Below are positions 14,854 through 21,548 of a stretch of DNA of 64,000 bases, one piece after another. Below the pieces are notes generated by a model. That model was not told the origin of the DNA. It saw only the letters and a list, made by a program, of their open reading frames with translations, and did not search any database. The DNA lies in contig MU008173.1 in the NCBI GenBank assembly GCA_010909165.1, positions 1,240,001 to 1,304,000 of the forward strand. The letters are read 5' to 3'. Made by a program: the position numbers and the translations under genes. The stretch is from Anthoceros angustus. Lineage: Eukaryota > Plantae > Anthocerotophyta. Every line of letters starts with the position of its first letter. Positions within the stretch are counted from its first letter, which is position 1.

Positions 14854-17800
14854 TCATGCCCCATAATCCCCTCTTGCAAAATTTTCTTCAGGGTAGTACA
14901 CTGCAACCACAGAGTTCCCTCCGAATTTGCGTCCATTCAGCATGCTCCTTGCTTTTGCCGCTTCTAGTAACTCAGTATACTCAACAAACACCTGCAGGTT
15001 TACAGACAATACACTCGAGTGTTAAGTTAGGAAGATTGAAATGGAAGGTTGCACATCACACGGATGGCAGCAATTTATCCACTACCTTTCCAACTCCAGG
15101 AACATCTTCACCCGTCCTCGGGCGAGGTATGACTAGGTTAACAATATTGCCTGATCACAGGACACCACCACAAGCACCATCGGACAAAGTAGTTAGCTCA
15201 GCACAGCAAATAGAACTGAAAGGAAACACACATTAACAACAATCACTACCATATTTCCCACACTCTTCCTTCATGTCCTCCAAGATCTCGTCATACTCTT
15301 CGTCGTCTCTCAACTCATCGGCAGTCACAACCTGAGGCAACAAGAAACTCTCATTATTTTTCTCCCAAACACCGATACTGGGAATGTGTTACATTTCACG
15401 CCAATATTCCTCACCTGAGTTAAGCACACCACTTTTGTAGCATTTTCGGAAATAGGTGACAGACCATTGCCCATGCCTGCCACCATACCAGGCATCAAAC
15501 CAGGCATCCCTGGCATAAGCCCAGGCAAGTTCCCCAGCGGTAGGGCATTTGCTCCACTAGCCTGTAAGGCAAGCTTCTGCAGCACAGGATAGAAAAATAG
15601 GTATAAAAATAACCCTGTACTCAGACCCTGGCTGGTGCTTGCACTAGATCAATGCTGACCTGCAAGGCAATGCAAGCACCAAAGTAATGCTTACCTGCAA
15701 AGCTATTTGTTGCTGAGCTTGCGCCAACACATTCGCTTGATCAGGCTTCGGCTGTCCACTGCTGACATCCAATCACTTTCAGAGCTCAGCAAGAACATAA
15801 CATACAAAGCATCGTAAGAACCGAAACCTGACACCCACAGCAACCTAGACAACTTGTGGCCCCATTCAAAGACACCCATAGTAATGCAAAAGACATCTAT
15901 GACTGCACGTGCAAGTGTTTGCTGTGACCAGTGCACCCAAACCCAACAGTGTTTGCGCTCATAACCTCCAGCACCTTCAGGAGCTACCAGCAGGTTCTCC
16001 ATAACTGTATTGACCTACTACGACTGGACCCTGACTTGCATACACATGTGTGAGTTGACATATGCCAACCTCGCAGTGGCACGGCGGACTGTCAAAGTCT
16101 TGTCATCCATTTTCATGCCATTAAGCGTTGCACAGGCTATGTCCACAACTGAAGGATCCTGCACATTAAGCATGCAAATCACAAGCAGACAGGGAGTAAG
16201 ATCAAAGCATAACCCCACCTGGCTGTCGCCCGACGCACGGTTAAGGTCTTATCACCCATTTTCAAACCATTAAGCGCAGCACAGGCAACATCTGTTACGG
16301 ACGTCTCCTGCATGTTTTATCGCAGTTGGGACAGATCCCAAATATAAGTCAGCGCAGTCAAGTTAGAACACACGAGTATCCGTTCAGTCATAGACACAGT
16401 TAACACAGCTGCTGCTGTGGGAAGCTCTTGTACTACACGGAAATCCAGCAGTCACAATAATGTGACCATGGCTGTTACCAGCAACCTTAGCCACCGTCAA
16501 GCATCTGATCAGCTCCTGCTGTATCTATTCATTCGCACAAATCCCACAGCACACACAAAAAGCAAGTTGGAACAGTACCTGGTACACACAAAATCCGTAT
16601 CCCTTTGAATTTCCCGTGTCCCGGTCTTTGACAAGGTCAAAACCTCGCAACGGGCTGCAACCAAGTCATAGGTTATCTATAGTATGCAACCCAATAAGCA
16701 CTTGTCCCCCTCATCCTCTAAACCACTGAACCCAGCCAGCAATCTTATTCGAAACTACAACTCACCCAAAAGATTCCAGCAACTCCTTAATCTGAACCTC
16801 CGTTAAATAATATGGCAGTCCTCCCACAAATATTCGATCTGGGCCATCTGCTCCCCCCGCCGCGCTGCTACAAGAATTGATAAAATACTTGGGAGCAGGT
16901 TAGTAGGCACATAGAGGTCACTGCCGACGTTAGCGCATAACCAGAGTACAGCTTACTCAAATTCCAATTCAAAGTGAGAAATGAAATGCACTCACCCAGG
17001 TGTCAGGCCAACAGCAGCAAGATTCAGATGTGCACTGGGCTGACTGGGCCCCAGAGTAGCTGCCATAGATGGATTATAGTCACTTGGCCTCCTTACCCTC
17101 ACAGACACCCCCTGACCGAAGGGCAAGAACATGTGAATACATGAGGGAGCAAGCATCCTGGAAACAATTCTAGAATAACAATCTGCACAGTGTCCCCACC
17201 TCAAATATGATGCCATCCAGAGCCATTGCATTACTTGCTTCTTCAACTGTTCGCATCTCAACAAATGCAAACTTCTTTTCTTGATTGATATATACATTCA
17301 CCACAGCATCGCCTGTGAGGACCAATGCAAGTAGTGAGTTTAAAAGAAGAGTCACACTGAAATAGCATGGATCAAAAGCACACAAGAGGCTCAGCAATTC
17401 CGAAGATACCTGGTCCAGCAGTGTTTCCACCAACAGCTGCCATGACTTGACTGAAAAATGTTGCAATAGTCTGAACACAACAAGAATCAGCTCGGAGCCA
17501 AAGTGACCATCACACCACGGCATGCAAAAGCTGAAATGTAATTGTGCAAACTGTAGATTTTACTGAAAACACACCTGTTCATTTGCCATCGGTGGCAAGC
17601 CACCCACATAAACTCTTCGGGCATGTCTTGTAGCCTACATGACAGAGGGCACACAGTATCAATCAGGTATGTCACATAGTATCAATCAGGTTAAGTAGCT
17701 AGCAACAATCGAAGGACCAGCCCACCTGCTGCGTCATTGCCTGCGCAGGCATCGCTGGCATCCCCCCGAACTGCAATGTGTGTTGCAACACTTTTAATGC

Positions 17801-19903
17801 AGCACAGGGAACTCTTTGGAAGCAGAAGCGTGCAAACAAAACAGTGCCAGCAAATGCAGCTCACAGAAGCTTACACAACAGCAAATACTGCAGCCCAAAA
17901 TGGAACAGAAACTTGACTTTCACAACACTAAACAACTAAGAAGCAGGAAAATACCTGAGTTCCACCAAAAGAAAACATTCCTGGAAACACTCCAGCCATC
18001 GGTTGAGACATTCCTGGTATCTGGCCTGCATAACAACAAGTCCCAATTTAACATACACTTAAGATCCGTTACTATTGATTCTCAGACGCAATACAAATCA
18101 TTACCAAGAGGTGACAGGTTGCTGCCGGGATTCATAGCTGCAGTTTGAAGCATCCCTGCTTGCATATTTATCAATGAACCTCAGGAACTTAACTGTCAGC
18201 TGACATTCTATATGCACAGCACTTTTTGTTCAAAAGCGCTATATTGCGGGTGAAGATAAATATCCACCAACTAATGTGTTTCAGTCCCTCGTTGTACATA
18301 CAAGCCATTGGATGCACGCTCGTGGTTGGGGACAGAAGGCCATTGGGCTCCTGATGCCTTCCGCCCACAAAGCATACAAAGACAACCACAAACGACAACA
18401 AACCAGAAAAAGACAAACAAACAAGCAAACAGTCTCCTCAGTGCCAGTCCAAATCAGGGGCGATAGACCAATCAAGCTAAATTGAACAACTTGAAGTGCT
18501 ATCTTGAATTATGAACAGGATTCCTCAACATATACTAAAAGCTATACAGACTATCCACTCCAACACTGACCTTGATAACCAACATGCATGTGGTACACCC
18601 TAGAGACTAAAAAATTCTGTTCCAACTAAAGAGATTTAGGGCTAAATTGAAGGAAGATATGATATAAAACGGACCTGGCATAGCACCTCCTGGAACGACC
18701 GCTGCACCTGGTGGAGCCATATCAAAGCCACTAGTCCTCTTGCTGCAACAGTCAAAAAGTTGAGTTAGAATAAGAAGCACCTTGGGAGGGTCATCGTGGC
18801 AAAGTCCAGCCTCCAACAAAAGAGATGTACCTTCTCCTATCCCGGGATGGTGACCTTGATCGCGAGCGAGACCGGGAGTAGTCACGGGGAGACCGGGATC
18901 GGTGTCGGTGCCGCCTGTCTCTCTCACGGTCATATTCTCGGCTACGCCTGCAGTACAGAGCAAATACTTCTCAAAACGGGCTTCATCCAGAAAAGCAGCA
19001 TCCACCTTGACAAGGGAAAATTAAAAAACTTCAGAGCAGTAAAGATTGTTACATAAAACAGTCACTGGCAGATAATTTTACCTTTCACGATCATGACCTC
19101 TATGTCTGTCCGTCCGATGATCTCTTTCAATTCTGTCACCCCTATCTCCCCTATCCCGATCTCTGTCATCTCTGTGCCGACGATCCCGGTCTCTTTCCCG
19201 GTCTTTGTCTCTGCTTTTCTCCCGCTCTCTGTCCGGCTCACGAGAGGATCGCTGATGATTAAATAAAAAGTCAGCAAAACAACAGCATGCGTCCAAACCA
19301 AATACTGTGATACTCACTGCTCCTTAACCGTTCTTCTTCAAAACTAAGCACAGAAAGGAACAACGGCAAACACAGAAAACCCAATCAGATTCTACCGAGG
19401 CGTTGCTTGAGTGCCATTCGCTCAAAATCAATGCAAAACTTGAACAAGCAAAACACGGATCAGCGGAGTGAATCGCAACAACCAGCCCCACTCCGCACAA
19501 ACCGGATGCAAGACTAGAAAGCTAGGTCACTACCCGGCATTAGAGAAGAGGCCCTTCGCCCGGATCAACCCTAGAGGGCAAAACGACCTAACAAGCAAGG
19601 GTTCTCGGGGATTTTGTGCAACACGGCTCCATGACGGAAGCCCAGGCAGCAAATCGCAATGCCGTGCAGAGAGAACCAGGGAGAAGCGGCAAGCAGCACA
19701 GACGGCCATCAAACCGGCCACCCTAGCAGTTAAAATCTTGGCACCAGGGCGCGCAATACCTCCCGCTCCCGACCTCCATTCTCCCGCTCCGCGTGCAGCT
19801 CGTAGGCCGGCATGGCCCCGTAATCTCCATGACCGCCCCTGGGGCCGGGCGAGTTCCCGTCCTCGTACTGGCCACCGCCATCCTCGTGGCCAGCCATCGC
19901 CAT
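14854..19903 (-). CDS. U2AF65: U2 snRNP auxiliary factor large subunit (U2AF65)
   Basis: RD/RS-rich N-terminus, SGFDMAPP, ATRHARRVYVGGLPP, KKFAFVEMRTVEEASNAMALDGI, PDRIFVGGLPY, FDLVKDRDTGNSKGYGFCVY; C-terminal UHM TKVVCLTQV...EILEDMKEECGKYG...GRKFGGNSVVAVYYPE. Start MAMAGHEDGG at 19903, stop at 14854. Confidence 0.95.
16070..16158 (-). other. U2AF65 RRM2 exon, variant B (DPSVVDIACATLNGMKMDDKTLTVRRATA)
   Basis: 89 nt bounded by cag and gt; same phases as variant A. Confidence 0.85.
16219..16307 (-). other. U2AF65 RRM2 exon, variant A (ETSVTDVACAALNGLKMGDKTLTVRRATA)
   Basis: 89 nt bounded by cag and gt; phase 0 in, phase 2 out. Confidence 0.85.
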
Positions 19904-20232
19904 CAGCCTCGCCGTGGCTGCGGGTTTCGTCGGACTTAGCCAAGATGTCCTGAGAGCTGCAGAAGAGCAGGATAAACCCTCCCTCGAGGGACACCGAGGG
20001 CTCGTATGGAGAGTTTATACACAAACAAAAGCCTCGACCCGATTTCCAGTTCGGTTTCTCATCCAGCAAACTTTATTACCAAGCTAGGGCTTTGTTCCCA
20101 AAATTGGAACGTTCCCCTTCCCAGTTCTCAGATGGACTATCTGACGGAGAAAGGAAAACATGAAGAGGACTACATTCTTGGCTGAGCTAGCTGCAGAGTG
20201 CAGATGCGAGAAGGCAACGATACCCCTCAATG

Positions 20233-21548
20233 TTAATCCGCATCTTCGCAGTCTTCAGTTTCAGGAACGGCTTGCAGAGGCCCATCTTCTGATTGATACG
20301 AGAAGCTGCTGTCGATCATGCGAATCTGAGGTTCCATGGTGTTGATCTTGTTCCAGTCCTCGTCGGATAAGGACCAGTTGAGGACATCAAAGTTCGAAGC
20401 AATTCGGTCGGGTCTGAGACTACGAGGTAGCACACTGGTTCCTCGTTGTACTCCCCAACGCAAGATCACCTGCCCACAGGCAGAAGATATGTCAAAGAGT
20501 GGGGAGCATGAAGCAGCAGCGTTCTTCGGTTAAAGGCATTATCACTTTGCAACGATTTTCCTACCTGAGCAGGTGTCCTTTTTAAACGGTCTGCGACCTC
20601 AGCAACAGCGGAAGTCCGAAGCATGGGTGCATGTACAGAGCAGGATCGGGAGAAGGTGATGGCGCTAGAAGAAGAAGACTCAGGCTCATCTTCTCCAGAC
20701 ATGTAGCCGGCGGTAATCTCCAAATTGCTGCCAGGAATTCCAAGGGGAGTGTGAGCTGAAACATGGATGCCCTGTGACTGGCAGTAGTCGATCAACTCAT
20801 CCTGCCTCCAATATGGATGCAACTCAACCTGCCACAGGCAGGCAAAATCATCCCATGAGCAATCCTGAAGCACAGCATCCGAGCCATGACATCTAGAAAC
20901 AAATCATCCAGAGGGGCATGCAATGCTGAGGTGAAGATAGAGGATGTAGAAAGACTATGTAGAAGGAAGGAGGTGCACCTGATTCACCGCCGGCACCACA
21001 TTTGCAACGCTCAGTATCTCTTCCACTTGAGAGATGGAGAAGTTGCTCAGTCCTATAGCCCTGACCACCCCCTTCTCCACCAAACCCTCCATGGCAAGCC
21101 AAGTTTCCTCCAGACGCCGAGACGGTTTGATCATCAACTCCCCTCCCCCCTTTCGGCTAGGAGGATCCGTGGCATCCCCCAGGGCAGGCAGAACCGGCCA
21201 GTGCAGCAGGTAGAGGTCCAAATACGTGAGCCCTAAATTCTTGAGAGAAATCTTGACGGACTCTTCGGCTCTTTTAGGTGCATTGGTGGTGCACCAGAGC
21301 TTGGAGGTGACGAACACCTCCTCCCGCCGGAGCCTGGGCTTGGGGCCGGAGAAGGCATCACGAAGGGCCTGGCCGACCTCCACCTCGTTCCCATACAGAT
21401 GCGCGCAATCCACATGCCTGTACCCGACATCCAAGGCCGTGGCCACAGCAACCCTGCAAGAAGCACCGTCAGCCTGCCAGGTCCCCAGTCCCACAGCTGG
21501 AATCCTTGCTCCCGTGTTGAGCACGAAGTAATCCTTGTTCCGATCCAT
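20233..21548 (-). CDS. Aldo-keto reductase (plant AKR4-like), 3 exons
   Basis: [48 protein letters not shown] (D-Y-K-H tetrad intact), [14 protein letters not shown]|VELHPYW, TPAQ|[10 protein letters not shown]. Confidence 0.95.

What the first reader, a model, noticed from the sequence alone, without database searches (positions are those of the whole stretch)
16070..16307. Tandem homologous 89-nt exons in U2AF65 RRM2: candidate mutually exclusive splicing in a core splicing factor
Seen: two exons of identical length and phase, each with an intact CAG acceptor and GT donor, 60 nt apart. They encode ETSVTDVACAALNGLKMGDKTLTVRRATA and DPSVVDIACATLNGMKMDDKTLTVRRATA (22 of 29 identical) with many synonymous differences. 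Either joins ...GFCVYQ to SGQPKPDQ in frame; including both or neither shifts the frame. Established: mutually exclusive exons are rare in plants, and RRM2 binds the polypyrimidine tract. Inference: both copies are under purifying selection and give two U2AF65 isoforms, possibly with different 3' splice-site preferences, analogous to the duplicated exon of vertebrate U2AF35.
Basis: partly seen in the sequence, partly recalled or inferred. Interest (0 to 1): 0.85.

Follow-up and report, generated by a model that had tools for sequence, protein, structure and literature searches.

The report
Ancient swappable exon in splicing factor
In this hornwort, a core splicing protein (U2AF65) has two look-alike versions of one piece of its RNA-binding domain, only one of which can be used per message, and the same pair has been kept almost unchanged in liverworts and mosses, so these plants can probably switch between two forms of the protein that picks intron ends.

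Summary
The window is a hornwort (sister to Nothoceros). The same ordered pair is in the liverwort Riccia fluitans, a second liverwort-like locus and two mosses. Independent duplications are rejected, synonymous sites are unusually conserved, and Physcomitrium RefSeq already lists two 560-aa isoforms differing only here. Sphagnum-like loci hold a decayed B; two lycophytes and seed-plant loci have one exon. In four hornwort-like RNA assemblies only B shows listed splice joints; A appears in intron-keeping contigs, with indirect hints of spliced A. Spliced A is shown in moss cDNA contigs. Likely mechanism (inferred): a conserved branch-point-like motif 17-22 nt behind A's donor blocks A-B joining, and decay removes frameshifted forms. 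The swap spares RNP1, RNP2 and strand 4 but changes the positions matching human G319 and G326, so any effect on 3' splice-site choice would be indirect. No paper found; the scan had not noted it before. A new member of a known kind.

The parts
14854..19903 (-). U2AF65 gene, class-2 land-plant paralogue. Exons from 17634 to the stop at 14854 checked; the start near 19903 was read by eye only.
   Evidence: open frame over 12 exons; 94% identical to Nothoceros P0192
16579..16654 (-). Upstream constitutive exon U (76 nt), holds strands 2-3 of RRM2 with RNP1
16308..16578 (-). Intron U-A (271 nt), kept in low-depth contigs of all four runs; 99 nt without AG before the acceptor
16219..16307 (-). Exon A (89 nt): helix 2, hairpin and strand 4 of RRM2, the version like vascular plants; no listed splice joint in the hornwort runs
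16159..16218 (-). 60-nt spacer, shortest intron in the checked part of the gene (next 83 nt); 60-79 nt in all six loci with the pair; no AG before B's acceptor
16194..16202 (-). Conserved motif ATCTT-R-CTC at +17 to +25 from A's donor: candidate branch point for B, also complementary to A's donor; missing where B has decayed
16070..16158 (-). Exon B (89 nt): the version with listed splice joints in the hornwort-like runs; peptide identical in Marchantia, Riccia fluitans and Nothoceros; carries Thr at position 11 and Asp at position 18
16053..16069 (-). Conserved 17 nt behind B's donor (GTTGGC, 4 variable letters, GTC-N-ACT), possible small hairpin over the donor; no compensatory change
15759..16069 (-). 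Intron B-D (311 nt), kept in low-depth contigs of three runs
15695..15758 (-). Downstream constitutive exon D (64 nt)

Best explanation
An ancient tandem exon duplication, older than the split of hornworts, liverworts and mosses, gives two mutually exclusive versions of the C-terminal third of U2AF65 RRM2. B is probably the main form in hornworts and A a minor or conditional one. Shown: the pair, its frame logic, its conservation, spliced B in hornwort-like runs, spliced A and B in mosses. Inferred: (1) A and B cannot be joined because B's branch point lies only about 17-22 nt behind A's donor, so U1 and U2 cannot both load, and pairing of that motif with A's donor may add to the competition; (2) forms with both, neither, or a kept intron carry early stops and are degraded or held back; (3) the protein swap (Ala/Thr at the human G319 position, Gly/Asp at G326) changes how RRM2 packs on RRM1, and so tunes how strictly weak 3' splice sites are read. 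My odds: real mutually exclusive coding pair 0.85; branch-point exclusion 0.55; open/closed tuning 0.3.
For: Pair in the same order, phase and near-same spacing in L001, L002, L067, L088. Exon tree rejects separate duplications in the window (p-AU 0.006) and in mosses (0.026). Versus Riccia, 12/54 codons of A+B differ silently against 87/148 in flanking exons (Fisher p 6e-6; versus a moss 17/49 against 86/146, p 0.005). Physcomitrium XP_024385754.1 and XP_024385755.1: 560 aa each, 9 differences, all in residues 369-394. Moss proteins P0293 and P0294 carry A joined to both neighbours on 1.4 and 2.1 kb contigs, so are spliced cDNA. A 3-nt insertion in moss A keeps the phase. Joints U-B and B-D in runs X1, X2, X7, B-D in X20; no A-B or U-D joint listed. 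The +17 motif is lost with B in Sphagnum-like loci. Branch points 25-41 nt from the donor enforce the OGDH pair, with a proposed limit near 50 nt (PMC7969005). D215R/G319R stabilises the closed form of human U2AF2 (PMC7261175).
Against: No listed U-A or A-D joint in any of four hornwort-like runs; A lies only in contigs that keep intron U-A. The branch point is not mapped. The hairpins show no change on both sides. Selaginella splices a 47-nt intron in this same gene, so spacer length alone does not prove a steric block in plants. Nothing here tests protein function.
Confidence: 0.8

Rival explanations
1. The pair is real, but its job is dosage control, not two protein functions: two competing weak exons slow splicing of this region and send part of the RNA into intron-keeping or frameshifted forms, letting U2AF65 regulate its own level. 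The residue differences are close to neutral.
For: Only the three introns around A and B are kept in contigs; neighbouring introns are at or near zero depth. All such forms have early stops. Silent sites and intron stretches are strongly conserved. Sphagnum-like genes do without B.
Against: B's Thr11 and Asp18 occur together only in bryophyte B (15 of 184 long proteins) and have been kept across three lineages, which dosage control does not require. This reading can also hold together with the main one.
Confidence: 0.3
2. In hornworts A is no longer a coding exon but a decoy or regulatory element; all productive mRNA uses B.
For: No listed A joints in four runs from four studies; the first codons of A vary between relatives; Nothoceros transcripts seen here carry B.
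Against: Hornwort A differs from liverwort A by one residue in 29 while 8 of 27 codons changed silently, which points to selection on the peptide. In X1 a contig ends exactly at A's donor, and in X20 a second contig of depth about 8 covers A's first 42 nt plus the 3 letters shared with U's end, then leaves; both are what spliced A would leave in an assembly graph (indirect). Contigs drop rare variants.
Confidence: 0.12
3. A dead recent duplicate or an assembly error.
For: None beyond the missing A joints.
Against: Contigs of three related organisms run through A, the spacer and into B; the pair is in liverworts and mosses; real decay looks different, as in Sphagnum-like loci.
Confidence: 0.01

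Closest known systems
Vertebrate U2AF1 (U2AF35) duplicated exons 3 and Ab (PMC5224494; PMC6821156)
   Same: Tandem homologous exons in a U2AF subunit, one used per message, two near-identical isoforms, one dominant.
   Different: Small subunit in vertebrates versus large subunit RRM2 in bryophytes; separate origin; here the exons are only 60 nt apart; regulators and isoform functions here are untested.
OGDH exons 4a/4b and similar pairs enforced by branch points near the upstream donor (PMC7969005)
   Same: Size-restricted intervening intron, AG-free stretch before the second acceptor, candidate branch point well under 50 nt from the first donor.
   Different: Branch points are mapped in OGDH and only predicted here; the spacer is much shorter and has no long U-rich tract; the steric limit comes from animals.
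Physcomitrium patens RefSeq isoforms XP_024385754.1 (X1) and XP_024385755.1 (X2)
   Same: The orthologous event: two 560-aa isoforms differing only in this exon.
   Different: An automatic annotation; two plant U2AF65 family surveys do not mention mutually exclusive exons (PMC8635922, PMC12027700).
Temperature- and CDKG1-dependent splicing of Arabidopsis U2AF65A (own knowledge; related papers)
   Same: Alternative splicing of a plant U2AF65 gene.
   Different: From memory that event is not an exon duplication; seed-plant loci seen here have one copy of this exon.

Membership tests
U2AF65 (U2AF large subunit) | RS region, two RRMs and a C-terminal UHM-type RRM, orthologous to plant U2AF65 | tested here: met
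   Tree places the window with Nothoceros U2AF65, 100/99; orthologue has three RRM_1 stretches; PDB match to human RRM2; RS-rich exons read
Tandem duplicated mutually exclusive exons | Adjacent homologous exons of equal length and phase with intact splice sites | tested here: met
Tandem duplicated mutually exclusive exons | Each exon spliced to the same upstream and downstream neighbours in transcripts | tested here: inconclusive
   Met for B in hornwort-like runs and for both in mosses; for hornwort A only indirect hints
Tandem duplicated mutually exclusive exons | Never joined to each other, never both skipped, in stable mRNA | tested here: inconclusive
   No A-B or U-D joint listed, but contigs cannot show absence
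Tandem duplicated mutually exclusive exons | Both copies conserved across species | tested here: met
Steric exclusion by a branch point near the upstream donor | Mapped branch point under about 50 nt from the upstream 5' splice site | not testable with these tools
   Candidate adenines at +17 and +22, conserved context and AG-free tract; no lariat data
Docking site / selector RNA structures | Competing long-range pairings with compensatory changes | tested here: not met
   Consensus fold gives only local helices, covariation term +0.8; donor hairpins have no change on both sides; five sequences only, and outer intron parts were not aligned

The most novel reading that the evidence does not exclude
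A mutually exclusive exon switch in U2AF65 arose before land plants (a zygnematophyte-like alga, L003, has a pair in the same order), was kept for over 400 million years in bryophytes and lost in vascular plants and Sphagnum, and acts as a global dial for 3' splice-site strictness by shifting the open/closed balance of RRM1-RRM2.
Probability: 0.15. Interest if true: 0.85.

Novelty: new member of a known kind. Interest (0 to 1): 0.6.

Why it matters
Protein-swapping mutually exclusive exons are uncommon in plants (general knowledge), and one kept across all three bryophyte lineages in the factor that reads intron ends has, as far as these searches reach, not been described. It parallels the vertebrate U2AF35 switch on the other subunit. 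Marchantia and Physcomitrium allow exon-specific knock-outs, so it offers a direct test of whether plant alternative splicing makes functionally different core spliceosome proteins and of how plants enforce mutual exclusion. Sphagnum gives a natural loss for comparison.

Tried and rejected
Coleochaete Trinity isoforms i1 and i2 differ in this exon but also at 24 other places, so they are paralogues, not an exon swap. Database proteins with two matches at the top are larger duplications, not this pair. Chara CBR_g28571, Physcomitrium class-1, Selaginella and one Diphasiastrum gene have one exon. A docking/selector structure was not supported. Whether the algal pair is orthologous could not be decided: p-AU 0.42 for a separate duplication, 0.52 for B grouping with bryophyte B. 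Nine paper searches found no description (bear on it). Pfam does not score the 30-aa exons alone. The spliced model was searched exon by exon by reference; the joined protein was given to no search or folding tool and was built only inside local scripts.

Full report
Observation. A and B share 63 of 89 letters, with 15 silent and 7 replacement codon differences. Both together stop after 7 codons of B, neither stops after 5 codons of D, and keeping any of the three introns also gives an early stop. The gene is U2AF65. A 12-exon model from RRM1 to the stop is open, is 94% identical to a Nothoceros protein and groups with it at 100/99, so the window is a hornwort. The gene belongs to the second of two land-plant paralogue classes in that tree.

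RNA. I laid contigs of four runs from four studies on 15380-17330. The runs are only guessed to be RNA, but they give spliced contigs and near-zero depth in constitutive introns. U-B and B-D joints are listed in X1, X2 and X7, and B-D in X20. No joint with A, no A-B and no U-D is listed. A lies in low-depth contigs that keep intron U-A; in X2, X7 and X20 the spacer and intron B-D are kept too. So this region is spliced late or incompletely, unlike its neighbours. Contig depth cannot rank isoforms and contigs drop rare variants. Two indirect hints point to spliced A. In X1 a 389-nt contig ends exactly at A's donor, where only a join to D would branch (the spacer and B both begin with G, D with T). 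In X20 the bin depths need a second contig of depth about 8 that covers 16266-16310, that is A's start plus the CAG shared with U's end, and then leaves. These are inferences from assembly shape, not junction counts. X1 may be the window's own sample.

Conservation. The same ordered pair with an unbroken phase is in L001 (liverwort-like by its spacer), Riccia fluitans (L088) and two moss loci (L002, L067), with spacers of 60-75 nt. B's peptide is identical in the window, Riccia, Marchantia and Nothoceros and differs by one residue in mosses. Its Thr11 and Asp18 are in 15 of 184 long homologues, all bryophyte B. Silent change is strongly reduced: versus Riccia 8/27 codons in A and 4/27 in B against 87/148 in five flanking exons (p 0.006 and 3e-5), so RNA-level signals overlap the code. 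Exon trees group B with B (94/91) and reject separate duplications (p-AU 0.006 and 0.026). Physcomitrium RefSeq has X1 and X2 of one gene differing only in this exon, and moss cDNA contigs carry A joined on both sides. Sphagnum-like peat loci keep A; several hold a decayed B without its acceptor at the expected place, and the conserved spacer motif is gone. Selaginella, one Diphasiastrum gene, Chara and seed-plant loci have a single exon, weakly A-like in the lycophytes. An algal locus that groups with Closterium (L003, 98/96) has its own pair 79 nt apart, but 89 letters cannot tell shared origin from a parallel event.

Mechanism of exclusion (inferred). The spacer is the shortest intron in the checked part of the gene (60 against 83 or more), has no AG before B's acceptor, and carries an invariant ATCTT-R-CTC at +17 to +25 in hornwort, liverworts and mosses. 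Its adenines sit in branch-point-like contexts. Branch points 25-41 nt from the donor enforce the OGDH pair, under a proposed limit near 50 nt (PMC7969005). The motif can also pair with A's donor, and 17 conserved letters behind B can fold over B's donor, but neither helix shows a change on both sides, so structure is possible, not shown. Against a pure length argument, Selaginella removes a 47-nt intron in this gene. Frameshift-linked decay would clean up leaks.

Protein effect (inferred). The moss B isoform aligns without gaps to human RRM2. With the usual numbering of that construct (my offset, checked by G319 and K329 falling on those residues), the exon covers D309-A335 and two more residues: helix 2, the hairpin and strand 4. 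RNP1 and RNP2 are in constitutive exons and strand 4 is the same in the window's A and B; human K329 there binds uridine by its backbone (PMC4786784). The differences fall at T313, Q315, G319 (Ala or Thr), M323 and G326 (Gly or Asp). D215R/G319R stabilises the closed form that masks RRM1 (PMC7261175). The simplest reading is that the swap tunes domain packing or a partner surface, not base reading. This is untested.

Comparison and verdict. It works like the vertebrate U2AF1 exon 3/Ab pair (PMC5224494) and is laid out like branch-point-enforced pairs, but it is a separate event in the other subunit. It meets the layout and conservation tests for a mutually exclusive pair; spliced use of A in hornworts and the branch point remain open. 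Two plant U2AF65 family surveys and my searches do not describe it, though the moss annotation already contains it. The joined spliced model was not sent to any search tool. New member of a known kind, interest 0.6.

Noticed in passing
L003:2426-2621 (Logan SRR23617307): The alga-like locus also has the upstream RNP1 exon twice (76 nt each, 44 nt apart, both with AG and GT, 76% and 96% like the window's), so two exon pairs in a row could give four RRM2 versions, one with Trp next to RNP1.
   Followed up: partly
L068:1649-1680, L073, L079, L082: Decayed remnant of exon B in Sphagnum-like loci, acceptor and spacer motif lost; a natural loss of the switch.
   Followed up: partly
L002:2837-2928: Moss exon A has a 3-nt insertion (92 nt) that keeps the phase; one Physcomitrium paralogue (P0249, P0302) is annotated only with this version.
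   Followed up: partly
window 16304: Runs X7 and X20 differ here, turning A's second codon from Thr to Pro as in Riccia; X20 shows no difference over 16132-16295, spacer included.
   Followed up: partly
window 15380-17330: All four runs hold contigs of a second expressed U2AF65 paralogue that align at lower identity and give false joints.
   Followed up: no
window 15756-15761 and 16865-16870: Tandem acceptors (CAGCAG before exon D, TAGCAG before 16867); contigs use 15758 and 16867.
   Followed up: no
window 18025-18670: One long intron (about 650 nt) in a gene with short introns, upstream of RRM1; could hide another alternative exon.
   Followed up: no
window 20230-21000, minus strand: 3' exons of an aldo-keto-reductase-like gene end about 330 nt before the U2AF65 start (read by eye).
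   Followed up: no
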